Shown here one piece after another: positions 32,541 to 45,835 of a stretch of 64,000 nucleotides of DNA. Position numbers and translations under genes: made by a program. Each line of letters starts with the position of its first letter. The first letter of the stretch is position 1. Location of the stretch: IMG/VR virus record IMGVR_UViG_3300032285_004054, positions 124,001 to 188,000 of that record; one strand, written 5' to 3'. Under the pieces are notes generated by a model. That model saw only the letters and a program-made list of their open reading frames with translations, did no database searches and was not told the DNA's origin.

Positions 32541-33470
32541 CTACTGCCCCATTGCTTTATTTGTGTATTTGTTCACGTTGAACAAAGCTTCGGGTAGTAG
32601 ATCGGCTCTAGAAGCTCTTGCAGGATTAATATCCAGTGAACCTCTACGGGAGTAAAGAAGAGTAACACAGCAATCAGTTACTTCAGGATGCTTCATAATA
32701 GTTGTAAATAGTTTCTCAGCACAAAACTCATGAAATTCATTAACTTCACGGAGAGATACAATCTGCTTAAAAAGAGACTCCGGATCAACTGCCATGCCGT
32801 CTTTTGTCTTAATAAGAATATATGCTGCACCTGTATCCTTCTGTTTAGTATGACGGCAACGTGAACGAAGAGCATTAGTAAACCAGCGACTTGTTACGGG
32901 CTGATTGTCTTCTGGATGCAACTTATAAAACTTAAGATGATCTACCTGAGAGGAATAGTCAGTTATTTCAATAGAATCTGCTTTACCGTAGAGTTCCCAA
33001 TAAAGATCGAGATATTCATCTTCGAACGCATTATACGAATTTACATCTGAACCTGACGGAAAGAAGCAAACATGTACAGGTGTCTGTAGAGCAGCTTCAA
33101 GATCTTTCTTAACTTGCTCTTCGTAGTTAACGATAGCTTCCTTAATAGAACTACCCATCTTACACATATCAAAAGAATTGAGATAGAGTTTAGCAGACTT
33201 TGACTCTACCATAAACTTTGACTCAGCAGGGTATGTATACTTTAACGTACCTGCTACAGGGTAGCCGTTATCGAGGAGAAATGTTGCTTCGTGGCAATGC
33301 CATGTATCAAAACCGACAAATTCATTGCCGGTAATACCGTGATCAGCTCTCGCTAATTCTCTTGGCATTGGATTAAGCAATGATGGATCAAATTGCTCGG
33401 TATAAATTGCGTACGAAGCTGAAGATCCAAGTGTCTTCGACGCAATATCAGTTAGGTTTGTTGTACTCAT
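32541..33470 (-). CDS. queF: NADPH-dependent preQ0 reductase, two-domain type
   Basis: QueF motif ESKSAKLYLNSF; catalytic C-x6-D (SRCRHTKQKD); EFHEFC; YSRRGSLDINP. Confidence 0.92.
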   Translation of the reverse strand: MSTTNLTDIASKTLGSSASYAIYTEQFDPSLLNPMPRELARADHGITGNEFVGFDTWHCHEATFLLDNGYPVAGTLKYTYPAESKFMVESKSAKLYLNSFDMCKMGSSIKEAIVNYEEQVKKDLEAALQTPVHVCFFPSGSDVNSYNAFEDEYLDLYWELYGKADSIEITDYSSQVDHLKFYKLHPEDNQPVTSRWFTNALRSRCRHTKQKDTGAAYILIKTKDGMAVDPESLFKQIVSLREVNEFHEFCAEKLFTTIMKHPEVTDCCVTLLYSRRGSLDINPARASRADLLPEALFNVNKYTNKAMGQ

Positions 33471-34027
33471 AATTCGTAAGGGTTGTTATATTCGTATTTT
33501 TGTGTTTCCCAGCGTTCAATAGAATTAAGCACTTGCATAACTCTATTTTCAACTGAACCTGAAATTCTAATAACAGGAACTTTATACGATTGTATAATAG
33601 CTTGAAACGATTGCACTACACATTCAAAGAAATCTCTATTAACAGTTCGTTGACCGTCTTCTACTAACGGCAATTCCGGTTCAACATAAAAAATAATATC
33701 ATATCTATCAATCATTGCATAAAACAATTCTCTAATAGCACTCAGCACTTTTAAGTCTTTAACCAAAGACATTGAGTATGCATAACCATCTAAAGCACAA
33801 CGATCGTAAATAATATTACCGTCTTCATTAAGACGCTGAAGATGTTTAGTCATAATAGCTAATTGAGTTACCTCATCACCATCCTCATTTATATTATAAC
33901 CTGCCTCCTGCATACCTCTTGTTAAAGAAGTTTTAAAAGAAAAATCATCTAATAAACCGCTATCTTGTAACGCATTTACAAGAGTAGTTTTACCTTGACT
34001 ATGAGCTCCTGAAATAGCTACCTTCAT
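33467..34027 (-). CDS. P-loop nucleotide kinase (AAA_28/dNMP-kinase-like)
   Basis: MKVAISGAHSQGKTTL, IYDRCALD, IIFYVEP; coupled to queF. Confidence 0.8.
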   Translation of the reverse strand: MKVAISGAHSQGKTTLVNALQDSGLLDDFSFKTSLTRGMQEAGYNINEDGDEVTQLAIMTKHLQRLNEDGNIIYDRCALDGYAYSMSLVKDLKVLSAIRELFYAMIDRYDIIFYVEPELPLVEDGQRTVNRDFFECVVQSFQAIIQSYKVPVIRISGSVENRVMQVLNSIERWETQKYEYNNPYEL

Positions 34028-34563
34028 GCTGAATATAATAACCTCTTATTCAAAAATGTAAACCATAAATTTGTAGCATCCTTATGAAGTTTTTCTAAAA
34101 CTTCAAACTCAAGTACCCCTTCTATAAGAATTGTACTATACTCTTCTATTTTACCGCCATCAAGTTCGGCAGTACAGCGATGAATTGTATTACCTGACCA
34201 TTTCTGAAGTTCTTGTACAGCTCTTTTTTGAGGGTCCTTGCCTTTAAGATGAGGATGAAGCAAGAGATTAGCAGGATGTAGATTATATATTTCATACTCT
34301 TCACATATTTCACCCGGTATAATCCTCAACCATCCGTGTAACGTAACGAATGCGTTTTTAGGTATATGATGTTTATACTCTTCTATAGAAGGCGATTTAC
34401 TAATTTGAAAAATTCTAGCTCCAAACTCGTTAATAAGTTTTTGATTAACGCCGTTTAAATCCTGTCTATTGGTTATAATAAGATCAGGTGTACGGTTAAG
34501 TTTCTTTGAAAGATTGTAAATCTCACTACCTGTTTGACTAAAAAAAGTTACCCAAGGTCTCAT
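34024..34563 (-). CDS. dpdN: PurN-like formyltransferase (DpdN-like)
   Basis: FFSQTGS start, TLHGWLRII, YNLHP, GKDPQ, GNTIH...ELDGGKI formyltransferase motifs; inside the deazaguanine operon. Confidence 0.8.
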   Translation of the reverse strand: MRPWVTFFSQTGSEIYNLSKKLNRTPDLIITNRQDLNGVNQKLINEFGARIFQISKSPSIEEYKHHIPKNAFVTLHGWLRIIPGEICEEYEIYNLHPANLLLHPHLKGKDPQKRAVQELQKWSGNTIHRCTAELDGGKIEEYSTILIEGVLEFEVLEKLHKDATNLWFTFLNKRLLYSA

Positions 34564-35414
34564 GATACGAACGTACAGAGCTTTTTAAATACGTGTGTGT
34601 TGTACAAAACATCAGTAATTTGTTCAGATGTTAATGTAGAGCTAATAAAATCAACAAGCTTTACTGACCATTTTTCATCTAATCCTCTAAGAAGACCGTA
34701 ACGCTTACCTAAGATAGCTGCAACAATTGGGTTCGATGTGTCAATTGTTTCAATACATTTAAGATTTTGAAATCCAAACTCCCAGGGTACACTACATCCT
34801 AGTAGATGATGAGGTTTATCATGATTAATAATGCCGTCTCTATACAACCTTTCAATAAGACATATACGACCTAAAGCATAATTTGACCATTTATTAAATT
34901 TAAAATCTTTTAAAACGTCAGGTATCATATCTCCCCAGTCAAGTTCCTTTTGAACGCTCGCAAGATCAGGCCATTCGTTAAGATAAAAACTATAATCGAA
35001 TGAAATAGCGATCTTATCTGCTATACTCGACATAAAACGATAACATTTTACAATCTCCTCATATGTCTTACCTTGAACAACACCTATTGTCTTACCTGGT
35101 AGTACAGAATATTTCTCAGTAAATTTTGCGTAGCTTTCGATTGTTTCTTCAGTATTTTCAAGTACATCTGGTACAATGTATTCAGTTGGTTTAAGACGAG
35201 ATACCCAATAAGCGAATTCGTCAGAATCATATGCTGTACCTAACTCAAAAATTGAGTTGTCAAGAAGAACATGTCTGCCTTCTTTAACTGAATCTTCAAA
35301 GAACTTATAATATTCAGGATGCTCTTTAAATAGATGTACAAGCGCATAATCATAATCATTATAAGATTTTGATACATCTAGGAAAGATATAGGTGTCTCG
35401 TGGCTAATTAACAT
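34560..35414 (-). CDS. dpdA: TGT-like 7-deazaguanine transglycosylase (DpdA3-like)
   Basis: TIM-barrel TGT-type motifs LLDNSIFELG, IVPDVL, IGVVQG, HHLLGC, IDTSNP; adjacent to formyltransferase and queF. Confidence 0.75.
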   Translation of the reverse strand: MLISHETPISFLDVSKSYNDYDYALVHLFKEHPEYYKFFEDSVKEGRHVLLDNSIFELGTAYDSDEFAYWVSRLKPTEYIVPDVLENTEETIESYAKFTEKYSVLPGKTIGVVQGKTYEEIVKCYRFMSSIADKIAISFDYSFYLNEWPDLASVQKELDWGDMIPDVLKDFKFNKWSNYALGRICLIERLYRDGIINHDKPHHLLGCSVPWEFGFQNLKCIETIDTSNPIVAAILGKRYGLLRGLDEKWSVKLVDFISSTLTSEQITDVLYNTHVFKKLCTFVS

Positions 35415-35432
35415 AAATATTGATCAATAATA

Positions 35433-35672
35433 ATGTCTAACGAAGAAGATATCCAGTATATAATTGTAAAAAAATTAGTCTACGTGATAAAAGTAGGGCC
35501 TATTTATTTTTGGGATACAGCTGCTACAAATAAAGCTGAATGTCTTAGAAAAGGTTTACAGTTTTTTAAAGTAGAAAGTGAACATCTTTTAAAAATTAAA
35601 GGTGCTGAATTAATACGTTTATTTACAAAAGAAATTATAGCTCAAGATAATAAATCAAATAAGTCTGTTTGA
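35433..35672 (+). CDS. Hypothetical protein (79 aa)
   Basis: Fills the gap between dpdA and polymerase on the opposite strand; 31-nt overlap with the polymerase 3' end. Confidence 0.4.
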   Translation: MSNEEDIQYIIVKKLVYVIKVGPIYFWDTAATNKAECLRKGLQFFKVESEHLLKIKGAELIRLFTKEIIAQDNKSNKSV

Positions 35673-38185
35673 ACCTCTTTACCTATTTGTGGTAGTCTCC
35701 AACCGATAGCTTCATAAACACTTTCAATAGGTGGTACTACAATCTTACTAAACATCTTATCGTAATCAATTTTAATTGAATTAAATTCCTCTGGATATTC
35801 ACTTGTAAATGCTATTGCATCTAACCCATACTTATTTTTAGAAGCGTAGAAGTATTTTATCTTTTGTCCTGATTTAATAGTCTCGTATTTGGTTTCGAGC
35901 TCTAACTCATTTAAAAGTAAATTATACGCAATAGATGCTTTTACGTGACAAGGAGTTGCTTTGTTAAATTTTGATAGAGATGCACCTTGTGAATACTTTT
36001 CGTATTCTTTTACAGATTTTCTAAAAGCAGCTTCTGCAACACTGAGTGTCTTAAACGTATCGTAAGCTTCTCTAAAAACTTCATTTGTCTTCTTAACATC
36101 TCTAGACAGGAAGGCTGTATTTACGGTTTTCTTAATTACCTCTTTTACTTTTTGAGGTGTTGTTGAGCGTGCAAGCTCAACACCTACATATTTAAATTTA
36201 CTAACAGGTACCCCTTCATCATCAAGAATATGTAAGATATATCGTTTCTTTTGTAAGAAAGCTCCTACGTCAGCAATGGCTTCTCTCTTGAATACAAATC
36301 TCGGATCTGCTGAATTTAATTCTTCTCTAGCCCAGTCAAGAATTTTTGTACCTAAATGCTTATCAATTGCGTTGATAATTGTATGAGATTGCTCAGTAAC
36401 AATATTATTGTCAGCAAGTTTGATATTAAGTTTATCAAGAATTGGCTGAATTGTAATGTATAACGAGTCAGTATCACCACTTAAGATTAATGAATTATCT
36501 GTTTTAAAAGTTTCTTTTGCAAATTCGTTAATAATATGTCCACCTGCTTTAGCTACAGCTTGACCTGTAAGTGTAATAGAGGATGCATTATCAATATCCA
36601 TGAAAGCAGAATGCTTATTTGCAAACGTACCATAGATAGAATTTAGAAGAATTTTTAACGTATACTGTAGGGTATCGAAGTATTGTATAGAGGATGTTGT
36701 TTCTTTATCTTGCTTCTTTGTTTTCTTAAGCTCAAGCATTCTCTTACGAGCATAAACTCGCTCATCATAAATACTATTAATCAAATTAGGACAAACACCT
36801 TTAAACTTTTGAGAATATAGTACACCAGCTTTTGAAAGTGATACGTTTTCTGCTTTTAAGAATTGCTTGAGTTTATCAACAGTGATAGTAAATGTACCAC
36901 CGTTGACAAGTTTAATTTGAACTTCTTTATCTACTTCAACATCTCCTGTTACTATTTTACCTAATTTAGTTTCAGGTGAAATGTTTAAAGTAATAATAGT
37001 GTTAGGGTATAGGGAGTTAACGTCAAAACTTACAATAGCTTCTTTGAGACCTCGTTCGGGATCTCTTACATAACCTCCTTCAAGAGCCTCTCTTTCAATT
37101 TCGTTTTTAAATGTAGGTATAATGTATCCTTGTTTTTGGGCTTGTAAAGTCATTGCACCTGTAACAATAGATACTTTACCGAGTGCGCGTTCAAAGTTTG
37201 TACATCCTTTGTATGCTAGTAGACGAATGATCTTAAGATAGTTAAGCTTATCTTCCATTTTACGTAGAAGATCGACGTCCTGAATATTGTAATCAACGAA
37301 GTTTTCCCAATCTGTTTCAGCTAATGTTGAAAGGTTTGTAGCGTTAATTGCAAGCTTACCTTCACCTAACTCGTATTCGGCAATATAATTCAACGAAAAC
37401 GACTCTCTATCTCCTTTAGAGTAAGTCTTATAAATTTCCATGTAGTCTAAACAGCTAATACCTGTAATGTACCAGCGACCTACATCTTTACCGAACTTAG
37501 CAAAATTAGAACGGTAATTAAGTTCTCTTACTGGTGATAATTGTTTAATAAACTCTTCACCTAAGAGGTTTTTTGCTCTATTAATAATATACGGCACGTC
37601 AAACTGCTCGGTATTCCATCCTGTTAGAATATCTGGTGGATCCTTTTTCCAAAAATTAACAAACCGTTCAAATAGTTCTTCCTCGTTACTACACTTATAA
37701 TATGTAACGTTATCTAGTTTAGGTGTATAGTCGTTCTTTAACCCCCAAGTGTGTATTTTACCTGTAATTGTATCAAGAATAGTAATGAGGGTAACAGGGT
37801 CTTTTGCTCGTTCGGGTATAGGAAATTCATTCGGTGAATACGTTTCAATATCGATAAAATAAACCTTAAGAGGAAACTTACTGAATTCCTCTTTATGTAC
37901 ATCCTCTTTGAAGGTTTCGATAAGAAACTGCTGATCTACAGGTAAATTACCAAAGAGTCTTGGGTTACCTGTATCTTGAACGAACTTATTACGTTCAAAA
38001 GAATTTCTAAATGAATGTCTTTTTAAAGGGGTTTTAAAAATAGAAACACCATCCTGAGCGCCTTCTTTTTCTGTATATAAGAACGGTATAAACGGTACTT
38101 CAGTATCTATACGCTGACCGTCTTCTGTCCAAGTTCTAAGATATACTAAACCGTCTTTAGGGTTATAAGATGCGTTTCTATACAC
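35642..38185 (-). CDS. gp43: Family B DNA polymerase
   Basis: Exonuclease DIET, WNTEQFD, YNIQDV; polymerase FDVNSLYP, KILLNSIYG, GDTDS, KKRY; GTG start. Confidence 0.97.
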   Translation of the reverse strand: MYRNASYNPKDGLVYLRTWTEDGQRIDTEVPFIPFLYTEKEGAQDGVSIFKTPLKRHSFRNSFERNKFVQDTGNPRLFGNLPVDQQFLIETFKEDVHKEEFSKFPLKVYFIDIETYSPNEFPIPERAKDPVTLITILDTITGKIHTWGLKNDYTPKLDNVTYYKCSNEEELFERFVNFWKKDPPDILTGWNTEQFDVPYIINRAKNLLGEEFIKQLSPVRELNYRSNFAKFGKDVGRWYITGISCLDYMEIYKTYSKGDRESFSLNYIAEYELGEGKLAINATNLSTLAETDWENFVDYNIQDVDLLRKMEDKLNYLKIIRLLAYKGCTNFERALGKVSIVTGAMTLQAQKQGYIIPTFKNEIEREALEGGYVRDPERGLKEAIVSFDVNSLYPNTIITLNISPETKLGKIVTGDVEVDKEVQIKLVNGGTFTITVDKLKQFLKAENVSLSKAGVLYSQKFKGVCPNLINSIYDERVYARKRMLELKKTKKQDKETTSSIQYFDTLQYTLKILLNSIYGTFANKHSAFMDIDNASSITLTGQAVAKAGGHIINEFAKETFKTDNSLILSGDTDSLYITIQPILDKLNIKLADNNIVTEQSHTIINAIDKHLGTKILDWAREELNSADPRFVFKREAIADVGAFLQKKRYILHILDDEGVPVSKFKYVGVELARSTTPQKVKEVIKKTVNTAFLSRDVKKTNEVFREAYDTFKTLSVAEAAFRKSVKEYEKYSQGASLSKFNKATPCHVKASIAYNLLLNELELETKYETIKSGQKIKYFYASKNKYGLDAIAFTSEYPEEFNSIKIDYDKMFSKIVVPPIESVYEAIGWRLPQIGKEVQTDLFDLLS

Positions 38186-38191
38186 ACGCTA

Positions 38192-38219
38192 ATAATAGAC
38201 CGGTTTTAATTTGTTTCAA
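38192..38219 (-). promoter_or_regulatory. Sigma70-like promoter of the DNA polymerase
   Basis: TTGAAA-16 nt-TATTAT-6 nt-GTG(38185). Confidence 0.68.
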
Positions 38220-39469
38220 GATAATTTTGGATTTGTCTCAAGAAGATATGTTCTTTCATTAGAACCAAACGGCGTAAAATATGCTTCGTGATGTTTTCCG
38301 AGATTCTTTTCATCTTCAAGCCAGTAGTTATCAGTAAACGCACGTGACTTCTTACAAAGATCAGCATAACGAGTTTGATCTTTAAGAGCATATTTAATTT
38401 GATCAATAAACTCATCACCTGTCTTATACTTTAAGAGAGCATCCTTATATGTTACCATATCTGGACAAACACAAGGTAGACCCATTGCTCCTGCTTCTAA
38501 TAATTTAATATTAGATTTAGCACGATTAAAATTATTATCTTGTAGGGCAGCGAATGTTAGCTGTGTACCTGACTCTGCCATAGAAGCCGGGAAGTCTGGT
38601 AACTGTACCCACTCCTTGTAAATAATTTCACCTGAATCAACAAACGGTTTTAACGGTAGGGGGTAGCAACCGTAAAACTGCCATTGATAATCCTTACGGG
38701 TCTTCATTACAGCATTAACTACATGTGCAAAATCGTCTGCTTGATTAACACGGTTAACTACGTCTACGTGTGTACCTGAAGCAAAAATTGAAATAACGGG
38801 TTTCTTTTTATTCTTTTCGTATCCTTTGATAAGCTTATCGAGGTTGTAATAGCGATCAAACCACCATTTCAATAGATAGTTCGGTATTACAGTCGTAGCT
38901 TTATTACCTGTTTTCTCAATAAAATAATCTCTCATGAAATCACATGTAACAGTAACCTCATCACACATGTTCATAATATCGAGAATAGATCCTCGAATCT
39001 CATCGCTCGTAAATGCATCTTTATTACGGTTGTAATCTGGAATATCTTCTCTAAAGACAATATCGTCGATTTCGTAAATAAGCTTAAAGCCGTTTTGCTT
39101 GGAAAGCTCTTTAAGAACTTTAACAAACTCTTTTTGAATTGGTGTTGCCTGGCGTTGAATTTTAACTGCCTGAATGCCCTGATAAAATCTAGGATCCAGA
39201 ACCATCGTTGTTAATTCTAACACAACAGCTTTATTATAGAGATTAAGCATGGAGTTAGGAGCCATACAACGATAAAAACTACAGCCACCGTAATCAGCTA
39301 AATAATTTACAGCTCTTGGTAGATTTGCCCCAGGTATTTCAGGTGGAGGTAATTCAAAAGAACCTCTTGTAGGTACAGCACAAAATGTTGAAGGCATACC
39401 TAAAGGTAGGCCAACAGGTGCACCTATTGTTGTGTCTAAGCTAGTTCGTACGAGATTATAGTTGCTCAT
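38216..39469 (-). CDS. GT-B fold glycosyltransferase
   Basis: GGCSFYRC, IYEIDD, DEVTVTCDF, VIPNY, NNFNRAKSNIKLLEAGAMGLPCVC acceptor/donor motifs. Confidence 0.8.
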   Translation of the reverse strand: MSNYNLVRTSLDTTIGAPVGLPLGMPSTFCAVPTRGSFELPPPEIPGANLPRAVNYLADYGGCSFYRCMAPNSMLNLYNKAVVLELTTMVLDPRFYQGIQAVKIQRQATPIQKEFVKVLKELSKQNGFKLIYEIDDIVFREDIPDYNRNKDAFTSDEIRGSILDIMNMCDEVTVTCDFMRDYFIEKTGNKATTVIPNYLLKWWFDRYYNLDKLIKGYEKNKKKPVISIFASGTHVDVVNRVNQADDFAHVVNAVMKTRKDYQWQFYGCYPLPLKPFVDSGEIIYKEWVQLPDFPASMAESGTQLTFAALQDNNFNRAKSNIKLLEAGAMGLPCVCPDMVTYKDALLKYKTGDEFIDQIKYALKDQTRYADLCKKSRAFTDNYWLEDEKNLGKHHEAYFTPFGSNERTYLLETNPKLS

Positions 39470-41267
39470 TGTTGTTTAATATATATGTAAAACCGTTTCT
39501 TTTTTCAAGCTGAATAATACTATCAACTTTACTGTTAATAGCGTTACTACGATGTGTTATAATATAACATCCTTCATTATATTTTTCAAGACGTTCACGT
39601 AATACTTTCATTACTAATTCAACACCTTTGTCGTCTAAAGAGGAATCGAGTAGTTCATCATAAAAAATAGTACTAAAATTAATATCGCCCTGTAAGCGTC
39701 TAATGTCTAGAAAAGCAAATAAACAGGCGAGGTCAATTCTTTTACGTTCACCACCAGAGAAGTTAAAATAAGATTTAACTTCGTTATTTTCATCGATAAT
39801 TTGCTCATCAAAAAACTCGTTAAACTGACATAAGCAATTTGCATGTAGTGCATTTAAGTAGTGAGCTAATCTAGCATTCAATAGCTTTAATATTTTTTTT
39901 ACAATATAAGCTTTAACTCCTTCCTCTGAAACAACAAATTTAACACTATCCAATACGTTTAAATTTAAATCTAACGCATCTATTTGTTGGATGTAGTTAT
40001 TTTGCTCTATTGTTAAATTTTTAACGTTTTCTTCTAAAGAAGTGTTAGTTTCTTGTTTAACAGATTCGATATCTCTTAGAATCTCGTTATTACTTTCTTC
40101 AATAATATTAAGCTTATTTGTACAGATAATATTTTTATTTTTAAGATCTTTAATCTTATCTTTTTTATCTTGTAGTTCTCTAAATTGCTGTTTAATATAC
40201 TTAATGTTTTCTTTAACATTATCGTATTGCTCTTGCCACTTGCTTACGTTTTTAGTGTACTGTACTTCTTTTTCTTTTAACTTATTAATAGCATCAGTTC
40301 TATGTGTCGTATCTTCTTCAGAGTATGGTCGTTGACACAGCTTACACGATGAACCTACCTTTTCAATCTCTTTAATATTGTTAATATTTGTTTCTAATTC
40401 GAACTTAGCAGTAGTTAACTGCTGTAATGTATTTGTATGCTCAGTATCTGCTGCAACTTGAAGCTCGTTTAGTTCTGTTTCTTTATTTGAAATAAGCTCT
40501 TCAATATTTACTGGTACATCAATTATACTATTTTTAAGTAGGGTATAATTGCTGTTATTGTTTTCAATTTTAACCTCAAGATCTTTTATTTTGTTTTGTT
40601 TATTAACATTGAACTGATTAAGTTGTACTAGATTAAATTCAAGAGTTTTATCAATTGTTGTTTTTTTAGCAAAAACTACATCATACTCTCTCTTCAACTC
40701 ATTGTATTGCTCTCTAGCTTTTAAAAGCATCTCTGAAAACACTTCTAGATTAAGCGTGCTTTCGATAAATTTTCGTTTATCAACTTTAGACTGTGCCATA
40801 AAAGGTACAGTATTATTAATCGTCATTACAACAGTATTTTGAAATATTTTGCTAGTAGAGTTTACTAACTGTTGTATATACTCGTTTGTTTTAGGTAAAG
40901 TTGAACGCGTGACATCAACACCATCTTTTAAGATGGAACATTTTGTAGGTCCTAAGGACCGTGTTACGGTATAATTGTTTGTTATACCGTTTACGCTTAT
41001 TTGTAATTCGAGTTTAACTTCGCAATGTTTTTTATTATAAGAGTTAACAATAAGATCTTTACTTAGTTCTCTAATCGTTGAACCGAATAACGCAAAATGC
41101 AATGCATCGACGACTGTCGATTTACCTACACCGTTTTTAGAATCTTCCTTATCGTAGTTAATGCCTGTAATGACATTAATACCTGATTGAAAGTTAATAA
41201 CTATCGGTTCACTACCTACCGATAGAAAATTACGAACTGTAAGTGTTTTAAAGCTTATTACCCGCAC
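39456..41267 (-). CDS. gp46: Recombination endonuclease ATPase subunit (Rad50/SbcC-like)
   Basis: NFLSVG, NGVGKST, central CKLC hook, FSGGERKRID, FYDELLD, IITH. Confidence 0.95.
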   Translation of the reverse strand: MRVISFKTLTVRNFLSVGSEPIVINFQSGINVITGINYDKEDSKNGVGKSTVVDALHFALFGSTIRELSKDLIVNSYNKKHCEVKLELQISVNGITNNYTVTRSLGPTKCSILKDGVDVTRSTLPKTNEYIQQLVNSTSKIFQNTVVMTINNTVPFMAQSKVDKRKFIESTLNLEVFSEMLLKAREQYNELKREYDVVFAKKTTIDKTLEFNLVQLNQFNVNKQNKIKDLEVKIENNNSNYTLLKNSIIDVPVNIEELISNKETELNELQVAADTEHTNTLQQLTTAKFELETNINNIKEIEKVGSSCKLCQRPYSEEDTTHRTDAINKLKEKEVQYTKNVSKWQEQYDNVKENIKYIKQQFRELQDKKDKIKDLKNKNIICTNKLNIIEESNNEILRDIESVKQETNTSLEENVKNLTIEQNNYIQQIDALDLNLNVLDSVKFVVSEEGVKAYIVKKILKLLNARLAHYLNALHANCLCQFNEFFDEQIIDENNEVKSYFNFSGGERKRIDLACLFAFLDIRRLQGDINFSTIFYDELLDSSLDDKGVELVMKVLRERLEKYNEGCYIITHRSNAINSKVDSIIQLEKRNGFTYILNNNEQL

Positions 41268-41273
41268 ATGAAT

Positions 41274-41301
41274 ATTGTATATGATACATTAATCATTGCT
41301 A
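41274..41301 (-). promoter_or_regulatory. Sigma70-like promoter of gp46
   Basis: TAGCAA-16 nt-TACAAT-6 nt-GTG(41267). Confidence 0.55.
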
Positions 41302-41303
41302 CT

Positions 41304-41912
41304 TTATTTTTTTACAATGTATGATGTAATACTTTGTCCGTTGTTTGTTGAATATACTTCACAAAATTCTATTTGGTTTTTTAAATTCAAAATTTGTTCT
41401 TCGGTTACATAAAAATTTTTATAATCTGAACAGTTAATGTTTTTAATATCTTTTAAAAGGCTTAAAGTTGTGCTTTCTGTTTTAGTTTCTAATAGACTTG
41501 TGTGTAAATCTTCTAATATGTAAATTCCTCCGCTTTTAAGTCTGTTAAAAATATTAACTATTGATACTTGCTGCTGAAGCATCGTATGACCTCCATCATC
41601 TATTATAAGGTCAAATTCTACTCCGTTAAAAACACTCTGTAAAAAATTAATATCTGTTTGATCGCCCTGTTCAATTACAATACGATCCTCTTGTAGGTAT
41701 TTTCGATCTTCTATATCGAAACCGTATATTGTTGCTTTTGGAAAGTATTCTTTCCACATACGTAACGATTGGCCTAAGAAAACACCTATTTCTAAAATAG
41801 AAGTGTAAGTATTTCTAAAATTTGAAAGTTTTTCATTATATATTTGTGTAAAGTGATGGTTTACAGCTTTATCTGTACTACATTTTAGTCCTATTTCAGT
41901 TAATATGTCCAT
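41304..41912 (-). CDS. Class I SAM-dependent methyltransferase, sugar O-methyltransferase-like
   Basis: TDKAVNHHFTQIY, ILEIG, YGFDI, GDQTD, DLIIDDGGH, GGIYILEDL, as in the MycE/OleY-type family. Confidence 0.82.
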   Translation of the reverse strand: MDILTEIGLKCSTDKAVNHHFTQIYNEKLSNFRNTYTSILEIGVFLGQSLRMWKEYFPKATIYGFDIEDRKYLQEDRIVIEQGDQTDINFLQSVFNGVEFDLIIDDGGHTMLQQQVSIVNIFNRLKSGGIYILEDLHTSLLETKTESTTLSLLKDIKNINCSDYKNFYVTEEQILNLKNQIEFCEVYSTNNGQSITSYIVKK

Positions 41913-41915
41913 AAA

Positions 41916-42623
41916 TTATACTATTTTTGTAAATCCTTCGGTGTTCCATTTTCTATAAAATACTTCTTGAGCATCAAGAAGTTTCTTTCTTACCTGATCT
42001 GATGTCTCTTCAGATTCGGGTTTATTTAGCCCGTGTTCAATTTGGGATGCTGTATTTAAAGCATGCGGTAATTTGTTTGCCTGTAGACAGCGTTCATAAT
42101 CGTTATCTTGAAAATAAAAATCAAAACGCTCATCAAATTTACCAATAATATCAAAAACCTGTTTACGCATAAACAAACAAAAACCTAATAAAAATTTTGT
42201 TGTTTCATAACCAAAATATAAAGTATTATCTTCTGGGAAATCATTATATGTATTTCTATGCCAGGAACGATCTACCGGGCTTGCAGACATGAGAGTGTTA
42301 ATTTTATTAAACGCAAATACCATGTTCTCAAGGCATTTTGGTTTTGTTATAACATCGTTATTTGAAATACAAATAAACTCTGATGTACAGTATGTCAAAG
42401 CTATATTAAGAAATTTGTTGTAATTGAAATCGTAAGGCGGTACAACACTAATAATTTTATTAGAAATATTTTTCCAAATAGAGTTATCAAAGTCTTTATT
42501 ACTCTCAACCAGAATAATATTATTAATATACTGTTCTTCTTTAAGGTAAGACGTAATACATCTTAATACCATTTCATAATACTCACTATTTTTTGTATAT
42601 GTAAGTATAATAATATCGATCAT
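41916..42623 (-). CDS. GT-A (family 2) glycosyltransferase
   Basis: IDIIILTY, ILVES, FNYNKFLN, CISNNDV, IGKFDERFDFYFQDND. Confidence 0.82.
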   Translation of the reverse strand: MIDIIILTYTKNSEYYEMVLRCITSYLKEEQYINNIILVESNKDFDNSIWKNISNKIISVVPPYDFNYNKFLNIALTYCTSEFICISNNDVITKPKCLENMVFAFNKINTLMSASPVDRSWHRNTYNDFPEDNTLYFGYETTKFLLGFCLFMRKQVFDIIGKFDERFDFYFQDNDYERCLQANKLPHALNTASQIEHGLNKPESEETSDQVRKKLLDAQEVFYRKWNTEGFTKIV

Positions 42624-43339
42624 AGAGTTATACCTTCGAGGTGTTTTGTTTCTTGTGCGTATATACGCTGTACGTGCTGACCATGCATTAATATACCGAC
42701 ATTATTATGTGTTGCAGTACTACTTACGTCTATATCTTCATCCTTTTCGCCGTATTTACTAACATGCCAGGACATACCTTCGTAGTGTTTATATAGTACT
42801 CCGCTACCGTTATAGTTACCAATTTTTAATTTATGTTTTCTAATATCTTCGAAAAACGAAGAACCGATATCGTATCTCTTTTCTCCTCTACTCTTTTGTC
42901 TTTCAATATCAAAGAAATTAATATTATGATCTTTTACATGCTTAACGTTTATAAAACAATGCCAAGGATGTACTCTATTATATAGTTTTTTACCTGCACG
43001 GTCTCCTACTATTTCTCCCATTAGTGTTAAATCCATCTCTTTAAATTGTCTAAAGATTTCATCATGATTTGATAGAAAAATAACATCCGTATCTACTAGT
43101 AAAGCATAATCTGTTTTTACGTTTTTAAGTAAAATATCAACCGAAGGTCCGTGTATACCTCCTTTATTTTCAACAAATGGTATATTTGCTCTTTTGAGAA
43201 TATCTTTTGTAAGATTATCTATAGAATTTTCACATATTAATATATTACATTCTGGGTGAAACGCTCTAAATGTTTTTAACATATTAGACGTAACAACAGG
43301 AGTGTTATATGAGCAAGATATAAGAGTTAAATTATCCAT
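42620..43339 (-). CDS. GT-A glycosyltransferase-like protein
   Basis: LISCSYNT, ILICEN, HGPSVD, LLVDTDV (DXD). Confidence 0.72.
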   Translation of the reverse strand: MDNLTLISCSYNTPVVTSNMLKTFRAFHPECNILICENSIDNLTKDILKRANIPFVENKGGIHGPSVDILLKNVKTDYALLVDTDVIFLSNHDEIFRQFKEMDLTLMGEIVGDRAGKKLYNRVHPWHCFINVKHVKDHNINFFDIERQKSRGEKRYDIGSSFFEDIRKHKLKIGNYNGSGVLYKHYEGMSWHVSKYGEKDEDIDVSSTATHNNVGILMHGQHVQRIYAQETKHLEGITL

Positions 43340-44141
43340 TTTGCTTATAAATTTCTTTTAAGGATTTTTTTACTAAATCAAGCGGGGTATCAGGTATGCC
43401 ACCAGGTACGGTGCCATGCTTTTTAACAAAAATTTCATCAGCTGCTCTAACTATAGTTTGATGATCGCTTCTTGAACTAATTGTACTTGTTTGAAGAGTC
43501 CAAGGAATATCCTCTAGGTATTGATTTGAGTTTGCAATATCTGCAAAATACCAGAATGGCGGATGCATTCCTTTTTGTATAATTCTATAAGTGTGTTCTA
43601 CGTGTTCACACGCGTTAAAAAATAACTCATCAATTAACCCTACTTCTTCAAGACACTTACGCGTATAAAAAGAAAACGCACCCACACAATGTGGATATAA
43701 TGCAATTGAAAGATCCTCTGAATAGCTTATAACAGTTCTAGGGTTAGGGGTTTCGGATCTAAACATTTTATTCATAAGTCCGTGCTGACTATAATTAAAA
43801 TGCTGTATACCTGTGCCTTTTGAAGCATCTATATATCTCTGAAAAACACTTTCATCCTTAATAAGGATATCATCTTCTATTAAGAAAATGTAATCGCAAC
43901 CTTTTTCTAATAAAAGCTTTGTAGCATCATTTTTACTAATACCAACACCCTTATTGGTTTTATGCTGTATTAATGTAAAATTATCTTTATTCGGGTATAG
44001 ATCATCACTGTAAGGCGTACCGTCATTTACAACTACAACATGTTGTATCTTATCAACAGGTATAGTTTTAAAACTCTTTTTAAAGTAATTCTCTCTATTG
44101 TATGTTACAATACCTATACCTATTTTATTATTTGTTTCCAT
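43332..44141 (-). CDS. GT-A (family 2) glycosyltransferase
   Basis: IGIVTYNR, VVVNDG, NKGVGISKN, FLIEDD, VGLIDE. Confidence 0.85.
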   Translation of the reverse strand: METNNKIGIGIVTYNRENYFKKSFKTIPVDKIQHVVVVNDGTPYSDDLYPNKDNFTLIQHKTNKGVGISKNDATKLLLEKGCDYIFLIEDDILIKDESVFQRYIDASKGTGIQHFNYSQHGLMNKMFRSETPNPRTVISYSEDLSIALYPHCVGAFSFYTRKCLEEVGLIDELFFNACEHVEHTYRIIQKGMHPPFWYFADIANSNQYLEDIPWTLQTSTISSRSDHQTIVRAADEIFVKKHGTVPGGIPDTPLDLVKKSLKEIYKQNG

Positions 44142-44787
44142 TTTTAATTTCTTTTAGTTGTGGTTTAAGATCGTCAATACTAGGTATTAGCTGATCCCAG
44201 GGTAGTACATTATATTTGTATTTGTACCAGCCACTAGAGTACATCTCTAGAGTTTGTTTAGCAACTTTATCGTCCTTTTGAACGATATCAAATAACCAGG
44301 GTGTAGTCTTATCAATACTTGAAGGGTATAAGTTTGTACTTCCTAATCTAATTGCATAATCCATTGAGCATAATGAATCGTTAAGTCTTACATCTAAATA
44401 ACCAATTTTATCTATTGCTTGTCTTGTAAAAACCTCTAAAACAACTTTTTGCTCGCTACCGTTGCTTACATTTATCTTAACACTACCATAATCTATAACA
44501 GTACCTGTTTTAAGAGGCCCTGTGAGGTAGTTGATACCAGTTGAAATAATAGTATTTACGTACTGTTCAGCTACAATTCTCAATGAATTAACAGATAAGG
44601 GAGGTAGTTCATTGTTTGTGTTGTATATAACAAAATACTGATACTGTTCGTTATCAATAAAGCGTCGTAGAAAGCTATTTTTAGTAGCGGTAACATTTTT
44701 ACCTATAGAGGAAAAAAATATACCTGGTTCTTCTTCATTTTGAAGAGATGGCTTTGTAATAATACCAATTGCTATTTGATTATTCAT
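44128..44787 (-). CDS. Degenerate GT2-like protein
   Basis: IAIGIIT start and FTRQAIDKIGYLD...DYAIR resemble the neighbouring GT2; no evident DXD. Confidence 0.45.
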   Translation of the reverse strand: MNNQIAIGIITKPSLQNEEEPGIFFSSIGKNVTATKNSFLRRFIDNEQYQYFVIYNTNNELPPLSVNSLRIVAEQYVNTIISTGINYLTGPLKTGTVIDYGSVKINVSNGSEQKVVLEVFTRQAIDKIGYLDVRLNDSLCSMDYAIRLGSTNLYPSSIDKTTPWLFDIVQKDDKVAKQTLEMYSSGWYKYKYNVLPWDQLIPSIDDLKPQLKEIKNGNK

Positions 44788-45835
44788 TTGTTTGTTGTGA
44801 TATTTTATATAGTTCTAAGCATTTATCTAGTATACTTCTTTTATCTACATCAGTTGTTAATAAATTAACAAATTCTTGTAACGCTGTTTCAATGTCGAAA
44901 CTTAAATTTTCTAATTCTTCTCCTTCAACTTGTTTTTCTTCTAAGAGATTAAATTCAGTTCTTAAAGAGAGAGGTTTATACTGCGATATTTTTGTAATAA
45001 TAGAATCAATATGTTGAGCGGTTAATTTGTTATCAACATAAAGACTAACTATATTGTTTCTTACTATCTCCTCAACATTCTTTATAGAACCGTCAAATAT
45101 TTTTGCAGTATTAATTCTCTTATGCTTAGGTGAAAATGTATTTTCAATAAATTCAACATCTAGCGTATCTACATCTAATATCGAAACACCTTTTTGTTGA
45201 TCTCTGTCTCCAAAATCTAACTCATGAGGTGAACCTAGATATAATATACTTTTACCACCAGGGTAGAACCTATGCTCTCTAAAATGAAAATGACCTGATA
45301 TAACTAAATCAGCCTTATCATGTAAAAAGGTATTTTCAAAACCATGCTCACATACTTTATGTTGGTTCATTCTAAAATTAATAATATCAAAATGTCCAAC
45401 TATAACATCACACTTAGGTATACTCTTAGCTTCAGTACCCCAAGGGCAAAATGTAAATGATTTATCTCTAATTTTAAAATTACGTAACTCTTCAAAAACT
45501 GTTACGTTCTTATTATTAAGAATAGAAATCGAATTAACGTCAGATTTATCTTTATAGAAGCAATCATGATTACCAGTTATTGCTACAATATTAAAATCTT
45601 CTAATATATTAAAAAATCTATTCGCAGCATGTATTGTGTTAACACCAATTAAATGTCTATCATGAAAGATATCTCCTGCAATAATAATATCTTTAATATT
45701 GCGTTCAAGTAATGTCGATTTTAACCAATAAGCAAATTTGATAGCTATATCATGCCAGGTCTGCGAGTTTTGATGTACACCTAAGTGTATATCACTTATA
45801 CAGGCTATTTTTGGACCTGTGATATTATTCATCAT
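44780..45835 (-). CDS. gp47: Recombination endonuclease nuclease subunit (Mre11/SbcD-like)
   Basis: SDIHLG, GDIFHDR, GNHD, GHF, SGHFH, YLGSP. Confidence 0.95.
   Translation of the reverse strand: MMNNITGPKIACISDIHLGVHQNSQTWHDIAIKFAYWLKSTLLERNIKDIIIAGDIFHDRHLIGVNTIHAANRFFNILEDFNIVAITGNHDCFYKDKSDVNSISILNNKNVTVFEELRNFKIRDKSFTFCPWGTEAKSIPKCDVIVGHFDIINFRMNQHKVCEHGFENTFLHDKADLVISGHFHFREHRFYPGGKSILYLGSPHELDFGDRDQQKGVSILDVDTLDVEFIENTFSPKHKRINTAKIFDGSIKNVEEIVRNNIVSLYVDNKLTAQHIDSIITKISQYKPLSLRTEFNLLEEKQVEGEELENLSFDIETALQEFVNLLTTDVDKRSILDKCLELYKISQQTNE

What the first reader, a model, noticed from the sequence alone, without database searches (positions are those of the whole stretch)
38216..44787. Glycosyltransferase / O-methyltransferase island embedded in the replication module, splitting gp47 from gp46
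Seen: three GT-A enzymes, one degenerate GT and a sugar-O-methyltransferase-like gene sit between gp47 and gp46, and a GT-B enzyme sits between gp46 and the polymerase. The inner island looks more AT-rich than its flanks. Known: T4 DNA glucosyltransferases sit in this same neighbourhood (a-gt near 47/55). Inference: a multi-step, methyl-capped glycan is built either on DNA (a second hypermodification layer, possibly on the preQ1 aminomethyl group) or on virion proteins or host surface. No hydroxymethylase is visible in the window, so the acceptor is unknown; a glycosylated deazaguanine would be new chemistry.
Basis: partly seen in the sequence, partly recalled or inferred. Interest (0 to 1): 0.7.

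Follow-up and report, generated by a model that had tools for sequence, protein, structure and literature searches.

The report
Phage glycan-building gene cassette
A large uncultured T4-like phage carries, inside its DNA-replication operon, a real set of sugar-adding and sugar-methylating enzymes that probably decorate the phage's own particle (or the host surface) rather than its DNA, so the proposed "sugar on deazaguanine" chemistry is unlikely.

Summary
All six enzyme calls are confirmed. Between gp47 and gp46 lie a degenerate GT-A, three GT-A glycosyltransferases and a MycE/TylE-type sugar O-methyltransferase. A GT4-type GT-B enzyme lies between gp46 and the polymerase.

This is not a recent insertion. 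gp46-GTB-gp43 is the order in every related locus long enough to show it (54 with all three genes). GTB is as conserved as the polymerase (63% vs 61% identity), and one homologue has an intein in its active-site motif. A GT2 gene follows gp47 in 26 of 28 related loci that reach there. The genes after it form a hypervariable cassette (fucosyl-, galactosyl-transferases, Glf, several methyltransferases).

The window's four-gene block recurs at 60-68% identity elsewhere in another phage genome. The genome also encodes RmlB/RmlC, so a methyl-capped 6-deoxyhexose glycan is likely.

DNA is an unlikely acceptor:
- The genome has no ThyA-family, TET/JBP or C5-methylase gene.
- Its deazaguanine module matches the formyl-preQ1 module of Flavobacterium phage immuto, so the amine is already capped.
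- Complete relatives keep the GT system but lack QueC, QueD and DpdA.

Virion-protein glycosylation is the best guess (about 0.4). The acceptor remains unproven.

The parts
44780..45835 (-). gp47 (SbcD/Mre11-like nuclease subunit); upstream boundary of the island
   Evidence: phrog_100 2e-65, PF00149. It is followed directly by a GT2b-type gene in relatives L002-L012 and in those of L033-L079 that reach gp47.
44128..44787 (-). orf219: degenerate GT-A, a paralogue of GT2b and probably catalytically dead
   Evidence: No HMM hit. BLAST to GT2b homologues gives 26% identity, E 7e-7. The alignment shows loss of VVVNDG, and EDD reads YNT. Atlas neighbours are viral GT2-like clusters; the Atlas model has pLDDT 0.54.
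43332..44141 (-). GT2b: conserved 'anchor' GT-A glycosyltransferase with an intact EDD motif
   Evidence: phrog_2456 5e-27; TIGR01556 rhamnosyltransferase 1.8e-7. It has 1194 homologues. The AF2 model has pLDDT 94, and its best PDB matches are WrtF, B4GALNT1, K4CP, ppGalNAc-T and TarS/P.
42620..43339 (-). orf239: GT-A (GT2-like) glycosyltransferase with a conserved DTD motif
   Evidence: ESM Atlas gives feature score 0.99 and TM 0.91 to viral GT2 clusters. DTD/DSD is conserved in the L018, L019 and L021 homologues.
41916..42623 (-). GT2a: family-2 glycosyltransferase
   Evidence: PF00535 7e-10, 39.5 bits, above the cut-off. Homologues occur at 34-37% identity in L059-L076 and at 60% in L018.
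41304..41912 (-). MT: MycE/TylE-type metal-dependent sugar O-methyltransferase core (the 'methyl cap')
   Evidence: PDB 3ssm 2.7e-23 and 8ia9 4e-22, with the IDDGxH and ED motifs aligned. phrog_21658 5e-29. The nearest homologues (63-65%) lie on 221-227 kb phage contigs.
39456..41267 (-). gp46 (SbcC/Rad50-like); downstream boundary of the island
   Evidence: phrog_77 2e-92.
38216..39469 (-). GTB: GT4-like GT-B glycosyltransferase, a clade-core gene lying between gp46 and gp43 in every related locus that holds all three (54)
   Evidence: phrog_7162 3e-25. It has 1455 homologues, and the top 120 are all at least 64% identical. The AF2 model has pLDDT 84; best matches are BshA, PimB', MshA, WaaG and TarM. 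Mean identity is 63%, against 61% for the polymerase and 46% for gp46, in 54 loci. One homologue carries an intein at K318|S319.
35642..38185 (-). gp43 family-B DNA polymerase (context)
   Evidence: phrog_262 5e-203.
32541..35414 (-). DNA-modification module, not part of the glycan system: DpdA-like (34560-35414), DpdN-like formyltransferase (34024-34563), AAA_28 kinase-like (33467-34027) and QueF (32541-33470)
   Evidence: Pfam and NCBIfam hits. Atlas places orf284 with TGT/DpdA clusters. The formyltransferase hits only the DpdN of immuto phages, at 41% identity. Immuto has the same gene order, and immuto DNA is fdPreQ1 (PMC10516641).

Best explanation
The locus is a cytoplasmic, stepwise glycan-assembly system that is ancestral to a large clade of uncultured T4-like phages of about 200-250 kb.

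It has two fixed parts. One is a GT4-type GT-B enzyme (GTB) placed between gp46 and gp43. The other is a GT2 'anchor' enzyme (GT2b) placed right after gp47. Between GT2b and gp46 sits a swappable cassette of further transferases and methyltransferases.

In this phage the cassette is minimal: GT2b, orf239, GT2a and a MycE/TylE-like O-methyltransferase, plus a dead GT2b paralogue (orf219). Using host nucleotide sugars and a phage-supplied dTDP-6-deoxyhexose branch (RmlB/RmlC), these soluble enzymes would add about three or four sugars one after another. The last one, probably a rhamnose-type 6-deoxyhexose, would then be O-methylated.

Most likely acceptor (inferred, not shown): the phage's own virion proteins, glycosylated in the cytoplasm before or during assembly. 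Mycobacteriophages and giant algal viruses do this. The variable outer sugars would give related phages different surface 'glycotypes'.

Shown: gene identities, folds, motifs, synteny, conservation, and the absence of DNA-acceptor pathways.
Inferred: the sugar identities, the order of steps and the acceptor.
For: Enzyme identities and intact motifs.

Core status:
- gp46-GTB-gp43 is the order in every related locus that holds all three genes (54), and GTB was confirmed in all 80 loci kept, of 545 matches.
- GTB averages 63% identity, against 61% for the polymerase and 46% for gp46.
- One homologue carries an intein exactly in the invariant K318..E325 donor-site motif.

Variable cassette at a fixed site: relatives carry GT10 and GT11 fucosyltransferases, GT25, GT7C, GT47-like, DUF6492, Glf, and Methyltransf_21, _23, _24 and TylF.

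The module moves as a unit: GT2b-orf239-GT2a-MT recurs in the same order at 60-68% identity in L018, next to an epimerase, Glf and the gp15/portal genes.

Donor supply: RmlB-like and RmlC genes lie at G000 44138-45648. GT2b's best NCBIfam hit is a rhamnosyltransferase model. The methyltransferase's solved relatives methylate a 6-deoxyhexose (for the match; the substrate is from background knowledge of MycE/TylE).

Cytoplasmic, not lipid-export, logic: no hydrophobic segments were found. None of seven genomes has a Bac_transf or WecA-type initiating transferase.

Virion precedent: GT2b's only hits in cultured phages are glycosyltransferases of mycobacteriophages. These are the cluster F right-arm cassette at the position of Che8 108-110, and Bixzunavirus genes next to a virion structural protein. 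Glycans on mycobacteriophage capsid and tail-tube proteins are reported (Freeman 2023, as summarised in PMC12619734). The best viral structural neighbours include megavirus multi-domain glycosyltransferases.
Against: - No direct evidence identifies the acceptor. Fold searches give generic GT-A and GT4 neighbours with lipid, small-molecule, teichoic-acid and protein acceptors alike.
- The island sits in the early/middle replication operon. The T4-type late promoter motif TATAAATA occurs only upstream of structural genes at 8.8-23.3 kb, and none lies in 24-64 kb. The timing therefore resembles that of DNA-metabolism genes, although early expression of capsid-glycosylating enzymes is known in chloroviruses (background knowledge).
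- GT2b does not match the experimentally studied Che8 gp108-110 themselves by BLASTP.
- Peripheral LOS/LPS transferases also lack membrane segments, so a host lipid-linked acceptor is not excluded.
- No RNA data could be found.
Confidence: 0.4

Rival explanations
1. Host-envelope remodelling. The soluble transferases act at the inner face of the membrane on host lipid-linked intermediates (LPS/LOS core, O-antigen, capsule, or the Bacteroidota general O-glycan). They would change the infected cell's surface, for example to block superinfection or to stop progeny adsorbing to debris. This has long been proposed for the 'LPS genes' of large cyanomyoviruses.
For: - The GT families seen across the clade (GT4 WaaG/PimB-like, GT25, GT10/GT11, Glf, Rml) are typical of LOS and O-antigen loci.
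- The genes are placed in an early operon.
- Large cyanomyoviruses carry comparable clusters that are interpreted this way (PMC12801897).
- Bacterial homologues of the methyltransferase are common in Bacteroidota genomes.
Against: - None of seven genomes encodes an initiating phosphoglycosyltransferase. Flippase, polymerase and ligase families were not searched for; none appeared among the island genes that were annotated.
- GTB is conserved like a DNA polymerase and is intein-invaded. That is unusual for an accessory host-modifying gene whose target would vary with the host.
- I know of no experimental precedent in lytic phages (background knowledge).
Confidence: 0.22
2. DNA hypermodification. 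The transferases glycosylate phage DNA after replication, either on the deazaguanine or on another base. This would be a second layer of protection against restriction, analogous to T4 a-gt/b-gt or the TET-associated transferases.
For: - The position is inside the replication and recombination operon, next to the polymerase. The neighbourhood is analogous to that of T4 a-gt and b-gt.
- Hypervariable transferase sets are also seen in DNA-glycosylating phages (bioRxiv 10.1101/2023.12.21.572611 and PMC13326640).
- GT2b has weak hits to TAGT (E 2e-3) and phrog_842 (5e-4).
Against: - Every known DNA glycosylation starts from a hydroxylated pyrimidine made by a ThyA homologue or by a methylase plus TET. 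This complete genome has none of these.
- The deazaguanine module predicts formyl-preQ1, which has no free amine or hydroxyl.
- G002 (complete) and G003 (92% complete) keep GTB and the GT2 island but lack QueC, QueD, DpdA-like and ThyA-family genes.
- The TAGT hit is below the Pfam cut-off and covers only 59 residues.
- There is no similarity to T4 a-gt or b-gt.
- Relatives carry up to about 10 transferases, including fucosyltransferases. That exceeds the mono- to tri-saccharides known on DNA.
Confidence: 0.1
3. Another cytoplasmic acceptor. The system glycosylates a small molecule or a non-virion protein, for example a host factor or a defence signal. Alternatively it makes a free or storage oligosaccharide.
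For: The nearest GT4 structures include small-molecule transferases (BshA, MshA, sucrose-phosphate synthase, TreT). The best PDB matches of GT2b include a nucleoside glycosyltransferase, AvpGT.
Against: Multi-enzyme, hypervariable, methyl-capped cassettes are typical of exposed surface glycans (inference). No partner genes point to a particular small molecule.
Confidence: 0.13
4. Recently captured, decaying fragments of a host LPS locus with no function for the phage.
For: One member, orf219, is clearly degenerate. The island is in the lowest 1% of the genome for GC.
Against: - All ORFs are intact and translationally coupled.
- GTB and GT2b have more than 1000 homologues each on phage contigs at fixed positions.
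- The four-gene block is conserved at 60-68% identity in another phage.
- The best bacterial matches to the methyltransferase reach only 33-51% identity.
- GC3 matches that of the neighbouring core genes.
Confidence: 0.03

Closest known systems
Mycobacteriophage virion-glycosylation cassettes (cluster F, Che8 genes 108-110; Bixzunavirus transferase clusters; Freeman et al. 2023)
   Same: Both are small clusters of soluble phage-encoded GT-A/GT-B transferases outside the structural module, with variable content between related phages. GT2b's only hits in cultured phages are in these cassettes, at about 26% identity.
   Different: GT2b has no BLASTP match to Che8 gp108-110 themselves. The hosts and phage families are unrelated. 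Here one transferase (GTB) is a clade-core gene conserved as well as the polymerase. Virion glycosylation has not been shown for this clade.
Glycosyltransferase / 'LPS gene' clusters of large T4-like cyanomyoviruses (P-SSM2, S-SCSM1, S-SCSM2R)
   Same: Both are T4-like phages of about 200 kb or more with many GT2, GT10, GT11 and GT25 genes, sugar epimerases and RmlC, and the function is unresolved (PMC12801897).
   Different: The clade is different: the polymerase is at most 34% identical to cyanophage and pelagiphage polymerases. Here the cassette sits at a fixed hotspot that splits gp47 from gp46, with a universally conserved GT4 gene between gp46 and gp43. GTB has no cyanophage match.
Giant-virus capsid and fibril glycosylation machinery (e.g. 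chlorovirus PBCV-1 A064R, with rhamnosyltransferase domains plus a methyltransferase that caps rhamnose; megavirus transferases)
   Same: In both, cytoplasmic virus-encoded transferases build a methyl-capped, rhamnose-containing glycan on virion proteins without host ER or lipid carriers (background knowledge; review PMC9614988 listed). A megavirus transferase is among GT2b's best viral structural matches.
   Different: Those are eukaryotic viruses with multi-domain enzymes. No homology beyond the fold level has been shown, and the acceptor here is unknown.
T4 alpha- and beta-glucosyltransferases, and the phage 5hmC/5hoC glycosylation gene clusters (TAGT with methylase and TET; ThyA-homologue-dependent arabinosylation)
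   Same: The genes sit among replication genes. T4 a-gt lies between 55 and 47, and b-gt lies between 43 and uvsX. Transferase sets vary between related phages.
   Different: There is no sequence or top-ranked structural similarity to a-gt or b-gt. The TAGT hit is below the cut-off. No hydroxypyrimidine-generating enzyme is present in this genome or in complete relatives.
MycE / TylE macrolide sugar 2-O-methyltransferases
   Same: The catalytic core aligns over about 130 residues at E 1e-22 to 1e-23, with the metal and base motifs (IDDGxH, ED) conserved.
   Different: The phage protein is only the 202-residue catalytic core. It lacks the N-terminal auxiliary domain of the roughly 400-residue MycE and TylE. 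Its substrate must be a glycan, not a macrolide.

Membership tests
GT-A fold, family GT2-like glycosyltransferases (GT2a, orf239, GT2b) | Match to GT2 profiles, or a GT-A Rossmann-like fold | tested here: met
   GT2a: PF00535 at 39.5 bits, above the 23.3 cut-off. GT2b: 22.4 bits, just below the cut-off, but phrog_2456 5e-27 and an AF2 GT-A model with pLDDT 94. orf239: Atlas GT2 clusters, TM 0.91.
GT-A fold, family GT2-like glycosyltransferases (GT2a, orf239, GT2b) | DXD-type metal/nucleotide-sugar motif | tested here: met
   GT2b has EDD, nearly invariant in 20 sequences. orf239 has DTD/DSD, conserved. GT2a has NND, conserved among its orthologues; this is a variant motif, so its activity is inferred. 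orf219 fails this test (YNT, and loss of the NDG strand).
GT4-like retaining GT-B glycosyltransferases (GTB) | Two-Rossmann-domain GT-B fold closest to GT4 members | tested here: met
   Foldseek against PDB: BshA, PimB', MshA, HepE, WaaG, TarM at E 1e-9 to 1e-11, TM about 0.6. Swiss-Prot: MshA, GPI3, PimB. The Pfam Glyco_trans_1_2 hit is only 21 bits, below the cut-off of 25.
GT4-like retaining GT-B glycosyltransferases (GTB) | C-terminal EX7E donor-binding motif | tested here: inconclusive
   The invariant motif reads K318-x6-E325, so the second Glu is kept and the first position is Lys. An intein sits at K318|S319 in a homologue. The CAZy family assignment was not tested.
MycE/TylE-type sugar O-methyltransferases (MT) | Sequence match to the catalytic domain, with the His base and the acidic metal ligands | tested here: met
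   3ssm 2.7e-23 and 8ia9 4e-22. IDDGGH aligns to IDDGSH, and EDL aligns to EDM/EDL.
MycE/TylE-type sugar O-methyltransferases (MT) | N-terminal auxiliary/tetramerisation domain, and a 6-deoxyallose-macrolide substrate | tested here: not met
   The protein is 202 residues and aligns only to residues of about 170-330 of the roughly 400-residue enzymes. It is related to the catalytic core but is not an orthologue.
T4-type DNA glucosyltransferases (a-gt, b-gt) | Sequence or structural similarity to AGT or BGT | tested here: not met
   BLASTP and phmmer against T4 a-gt and b-gt give nothing better than E 0.17. There are no Pfam AGT or BGT hits. They are absent from the top 50 PDB matches.
Phage DNA-glycosylation systems (5hmC/5hmU/5hoC-dependent, including TAGT) | Co-encoded enzyme that creates the hydroxyl acceptor (ThyA homologue, or C5-methylase plus TET/5mYOX) | tested here: not met
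   PF00303, PF12851 and PF00145 have no hit in the complete own genome. PF00303 and PF12851 are also absent in G002 and G003.
Phage DNA-glycosylation systems (5hmC/5hmU/5hoC-dependent, including TAGT) | Match to the TAGT profile above the gathering score | tested here: not met
   PF20691 gives E 1.9e-3 and 18.6 bits against a cut-off of 27.5, and covers residues 34-92 only.
Hypothetical 'glycosylated deazaguanine' system | The transferases co-occur with deazaguanine synthesis and insertion genes | tested here: not met
   GTB plus GT2b were found in all 16 large related records examined (loci). QueC is present in 2 of the 15 that could be searched. QueC, QueD and DpdA-like are all absent from complete G002 and 92%-complete G003.
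Hypothetical 'glycosylated deazaguanine' system | A free acceptor group on the modified base | tested here: inconclusive
   The DpdA-like, DpdN-like, AAA_28 and QueF genes are syntenic with the immuto module, whose DNA is 100% formyl-preQ1. This predicts a capped amine, but the base in this phage has not been measured.
Lipid-linked (Und-P) O-antigen/capsule pathway | Initiating phosphoglycosyltransferase and membrane export or ligation components | tested here: not met
   PF02397 and PF00953 have no hit in seven genomes. No island protein has a hydrophobic 19-mer above 1.22 on the Kyte-Doolittle scale. Host enzymes could substitute, so this does not exclude action on host intermediates.
Phage virion-glycosylation systems (mycobacteriophage type) | Glycan demonstrated on capsid or tail proteins, dependent on the phage transferases | not testable with these tools
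   This needs virions and glycoproteomics. Only distant homology of GT2b to mycobacteriophage cassette transferases is shown.

The most novel reading that the evidence does not exclude
The conserved GT4 and GT2 pair, with its variable cassette, glycosylates phage DNA on an acceptor that needs none of the known hydroxypyrimidine or deazaguanine pathways. Possible sites are an unmodified base, the backbone, or a base hydroxylated by an unrecognised enzyme. This would explain why a transferase is kept beside the polymerase and is as conserved as the polymerase. It would be a new class of DNA hypermodification, with oligosaccharides larger than any known on DNA.
Probability: 0.07. Interest if true: 0.9.

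Novelty: new variant of a known kind. Interest (0 to 1): 0.5.

Why it matters
Phage-encoded glycosyltransferase clusters are common in large aquatic T4-like phages, but their targets are essentially unknown.

This locus shows that in one very large uncultured clade the system is not an accessory gene. The clade has more than 1000 homologues of each anchor enzyme. One transferase is as conserved as the DNA polymerase, sits at a fixed place in the replication operon and has attracted an intein. A neighbouring hotspot between gp47 and gp46 swaps whole transferase and methyltransferase cassettes between phages. That pattern suggests an essential, conserved inner glycan with a fast-evolving outer part.

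If the target is the virion, this would extend virion glycosylation from mycobacteriophages to T4-like phages and point to a phage 'serotype' layer relevant to adsorption, particle stability and grazing or immune recognition.

The work also separates this system from the phage's true DNA modification, predicted to be formyl-preQ1. That corrects an attractive but unsupported chemical hypothesis.

Tried and rejected
- DNA-level search of the island against cultured phages: no match.
- phmmer against PDB for GTB, GT2b, GT2a and orf239: nothing significant.
- Reading Freeman 2023 and Pyle 2024 by id: neither is held. I used the bioRxiv version of Pyle and secondary summaries instead.
- Searching the whole ENA/JGI contigs behind L018, L019 and L021 for Que genes: these records are not held. 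I used IMG/VR records instead.
- RNA evidence of expression: no RNA run was listed. The single DNA run only confirms contiguity.
- Complex prediction of GT2b with its dead paralogue orf219, to test a pseudoenzyme-partner idea: the verdict was 'no answer', score 0.01, which is uninformative.
- Isoelectric point and net charge as a hint of DNA binding: not discriminating, since the DpdA-like protein is itself acidic.
- Scan for mucin-like Ser/Thr-rich acceptor tracts: only modest enrichments were found, the top one in the tail-sheath insertion, and there are no repeats. I treat this as a lead, not evidence.
- Rejected, compositional foreignness of the island: the flanking core genes are equally AT-rich.
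- Rejected, direct orthology of GT2b with Che8 gp108-110: no BLASTP match.

Full report
**What the window is.** The window is bases 124001-188000 of a 218.4-kb IMG/VR virus record. CheckV rates it 100% complete, and its GC content is 36%. It is a distant T4-like myovirus. Its family-B polymerase is at most 34% identical to those of any cultured phage; the nearest are Kyanoviridae-like phage C48C1, pelagiphage HTVC008M and cyanophages. On the minus strand, a late structural block lies at about 8.8-25 kb and includes the tail sheath and the large terminase. A replication block follows, from FolE2 and gp32 at 26.9 kb up to UvsW at 47.9 kb.

**Observation check.** Reading downstream from gp55 (45825-46385) and gp47 (44780-45835):
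- orf219 (44128-44787) is a decayed paralogue of the next gene. It has lost the VVVNDG strand, and the EDD motif reads YNT.
- GT2b (43332-44141) hits phrog_2456 at 5e-27. Its AF2 model has pLDDT 94 and a GT-A fold, and EDD is intact.
- orf239 (42620-43339) has no HMM hit. ESM Atlas places it in viral GT2 clusters with TM 0.91, and DTD is conserved.
- GT2a (41916-42623) hits PF00535 above the cut-off.
- MT (41304-41912) matches the catalytic domains of the sugar O-methyltransferases MycE and TylE at E 1e-22 to 1e-23, with the IDDGxH and ED motifs aligned.

Then come gp46 (39456-41267), the GT-B enzyme GTB (38216-39469) and gp43 (35642-38185). GTB hits phrog_7162 at 3e-25. Its AF2 model has pLDDT 84, and its nearest structures are GT4 retaining transferases such as BshA, PimB', MshA, WaaG and TarM.

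The genes overlap by 4-14 nt or are separated by gaps of 3, 30 and 36 nt, so they belong to one operon. The arrangement is reproduced in a second contig (L001) and in an independent Logan contig.

The 'AT-rich island' remark is only half right. The island is 30.5% GC, in the lowest 1% of the genome. But gp46 (29.6%) and gp47 (28.4%) are the same, and third-position GC matches the neighbours.

**This is a clade feature, not an insertion.** GTB has 1455 database homologues, and the best 120 are all at least 64% identical. In IMG/VR, 545 matches were confirmed. The 80 kept all contain GTB, and every one long enough to hold all three genes (54) has the order gp46-GTB-gp43. Over those 54 loci GTB averages 63% identity, against 61% for the polymerase and 46% for gp46. 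One homologue carries an intein inserted exactly between K318 and S319, inside the invariant K318..E325 motif that corresponds to the GT4 donor site. That is the signature of an active, important enzyme.

GT2b has 1194 homologues. It follows gp47 directly, often as two tandem paralogues, in 26 of the 28 related loci that reach there. The exceptions are two distant lineages, L013 and L014, where gp47 and gp46 are adjacent. L013 still keeps GTB.

The DNA between GT2b and gp46 is 3.2-8.4 kb long, and its content differs from lineage to lineage. It includes GT10 and GT11 fucosyltransferases, GT25, GT7C, GT47-like, DUF6492, UDP-galactopyranose mutase, epimerases, and methyltransferases of at least four families.

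The window's own block GT2b-orf239-GT2a-MT recurs in the same order at 60-68% identity on a 227-kb ENA contig (L018), in a different context. There it follows PhoH-NUDIX-AAA_28-epimerase upstream, and Glf, a helicase, gp15 and the portal gene lie downstream. The window's closest backbone relatives carry GT2b copies only 36-44% identical. The cassette therefore moves as a unit between phages. orf219 may be what is left of the displaced resident copy (inference).

**Chemistry.** Outside the window, the genome encodes an RmlB-like dTDP-glucose 4,6-dehydratase and a bona fide RmlC (202 bits, above the cut-off) at G000 44138-45648. It has no RmlA. RmlC is present in only 2 of 7 genomes tested, so it is lineage-specific like the cassette.

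GT2b's best NCBIfam hit is a rhamnosyltransferase model. The solved relatives of MT methylate a 6-deoxyhexose (background knowledge on MycE/TylE). The most economical reading is a short oligosaccharide, built in three to four transfers, that ends in an O-methylated rhamnose-type sugar. The sugar identities and the order of steps are inferred.

**Is DNA the acceptor? Three independent lines say probably not.**

1. All described phage DNA glycosylations start from 5hmC, 5hmU or 5hoC. These are made either by a thymidylate-synthase homologue or by a C5-methylase plus a TET-type dioxygenase (PMC13326640; bioRxiv 10.1101/2023.12.21.572611). The complete genome has no PF00303, PF12851 or PF00145 match. 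PF00303 and PF12851 are also absent from the complete relatives.

2. The deazaguanine genes form their own module just downstream of the polymerase:
   - orf284 is a divergent DpdA-type transglycosylase (Atlas TM 0.76-0.90 to DpdA/TGT clusters).
   - A formyltransferase follows. Its only matches in 50,697 phage records are the DpdN genes of Flavobacterium immuto phages, at 41% identity.
   - An AAA_28 kinase-like protein and QueF complete the module.

Immuto has the same gene order, and its DNA has every G replaced by formylamino-methyl-deazaguanine (PMC10516641). This module occupies the slot where T4 keeps gene 42 and b-gt.

3. The transferase system does not track the deazaguanine system. 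G002 (211.6 kb, terminal repeats, 100% complete) and G003 (92% complete) have GTB and the GT2 island. They have no QueC, QueD, DpdA-like or ThyA-family gene. QueC and the DpdA-like gene co-occur only in G000 and G004.

In addition, GTB and the GT-A proteins have no similarity to T4 a-gt or b-gt. The TAGT hit of GT2b is below the cut-off and covers only 59 residues.

**Host surface or virion?** No island protein has a membrane-like segment. None of seven genomes encodes a WbaP- or WecA-type initiating transferase. The phage therefore does not bring a lipid-linked export pathway, although peripheral LOS-type enzymes could still use host intermediates. This is the classical proposal for cyanomyovirus 'LPS genes' (PMC12801897).

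Against a host-modifying accessory role is GTB's polymerase-like conservation and its intein.

In favour of the virion:
- GT2b's only cultured-phage relatives are transferases in mycobacteriophage cassettes, at about 26% identity. These are the cluster F right arm at the position of Che8 108-110, and Bixzunavirus genes beside a virion protein.
- Mycobacteriophage capsid and tail-tube glycosylation is documented (Freeman 2023, as summarised in PMC12619734).
- GT2b's best viral structural neighbours include megavirus transferases.

Against the virion:
- The island has no T4-type late promoter. TATAAATA occurs six times, all on the minus strand at 8.8-23.3 kb and mostly just upstream of structural genes, and never in 24-64 kb.
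- GT2b does not match Che8 gp108-110 themselves.
- No acceptor has been identified.

I therefore rate virion-protein (own-protein) glycosylation at about 0.4, host-envelope remodelling at about 0.22, another cytoplasmic acceptor at about 0.13, DNA at about 0.1 and junk at about 0.03.

**Not host-derived debris.** The nearest homologues of MT (63-65%) sit on 221-227 kb phage contigs inside the same cassette. The best matches in 185,579 bacterial and archaeal species genomes reach only 33-51% identity and are spread over many phyla.

**What led nowhere.**
- The DNA search against cultured phages found nothing.
- The PDB sequence searches for the transferases found nothing significant.
- No RNA runs were listed.
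- The ENA/JGI contigs could not be searched whole.
- The test of a GT2b-orf219 complex gave no answer.
- Charge and Ser/Thr-tract scans were not discriminating.

**Verdict.** What is really there is a clade-core GT4 enzyme plus a GT2 anchor, with a hypervariable, horizontally exchanged cassette at a fixed hotspot that splits gp47 from gp46. It is a new variant of the phage-encoded glycan machinery known from mycobacteriophages, cyanomyoviruses and giant viruses. The acceptor is still unknown.

Noticed in passing
window 32541-35414 (- strand): A four-gene module lies directly downstream of gp43: DpdA-like (orf284), DpdN-like formyltransferase, AAA_28 kinase-like protein and QueF. [quoted passage not shown] The Pfam TGT model misses the DpdA. 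The module sits in the slot where T4 has gene 42 and b-gt. This predicts fdPreQ1 DNA in an uncultured T4-like clade.
   Followed up: partly
P0075, homologue of window 38216-39469; insertion maps to GTB residues K318|S319: A 379-residue intein with a LAGLIDADG homing-endonuclease domain is inserted in the invariant donor-site motif of a GTB homologue. Inteins in a glycosyltransferase are unusual. This suggests the enzyme is essential to the phage.
   Followed up: partly
L009 8682-9736; L012 15368-16422 and 4501-5540; L009-L012 gp46 (726 aa vs 603); L051, L053, L067, L072, L076 and L100 gp43: tblastn matches to gp43, UvsW and gp46 are interrupted by inserts of 0.4-1.4 kb in several relatives. 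The window's own genes are uninterrupted. These are probably inteins, group I introns or homing-endonuclease insertions.
   Followed up: no
G000:C1:44138-46185 (outside the window): RmlC (175 aa) and an RmlB-like dTDP-glucose 4,6-dehydratase (328 aa) are adjacent and sit next to an Hsp20-family small heat-shock protein. The genome has no RmlA. These genes probably supply the island's 6-deoxyhexose donor.
   Followed up: partly
window 8852, 10809, 19532, 20150, 20367, 23308 (- strand): All six exact TATAAATA (T4 late-promoter) motifs lie on the minus strand within 8.8-23.3 kb. Several are a few bases upstream of structural gene starts. None lies in the 24-64 kb replication and early region. The total count is below the random expectation, so the clustering, not the number, is the signal.
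   Followed up: partly
window 53614-54132 (+), and G000:C1:209077-209505 (-): There are two PTPS/QueD-family genes in one genome. One may be a QueD paralogue with another role, as DpdL is in Cellulophaga phage phiST. QueC is at G000 30265-30909, far from the DpdA module.
   Followed up: no
window 20158-22545 (- strand), residues about 206-235: The tail sheath is 795 aa, and phrog_23 matches only its ends. Its extra central region holds the most Ser/Thr-rich 30-residue stretch in the genome (57%). It is a possible exposed O-glycosylation target, but this is only a lead.
   Followed up: no
ESM Atlas result for window 34560-35414 (structure row 5): Some viral proteins of about 455 aa fuse a DpdA-like fold to an AAA_28 domain. 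This suggests that the AAA_28 'kinase' conserved beside DpdA and DpdN works with the transglycosylase.
   Followed up: no
L018 and L019 (ENA/JGI contigs of 227 and 231 kb): In these phages the GT2b cassette lies after a conserved PhoH-NUDIX-AAA_28 block and an NDP-sugar epimerase, and runs up to a helicase, gp15 and the portal gene. L019 carries a full RmlA/B/C/D-like set and a DUF5672-Methyltransf_24 fusion. The cassette's genomic position is therefore not fixed across the wider group.
   Followed up: partly
window 13981-16212 (- strand): A 743-aa protein in the structural block has a central endolysin/peptidase-like domain (phrog_34252, 3e-25). It is possibly a virion-associated cell-wall hydrolase.
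   Followed up: no
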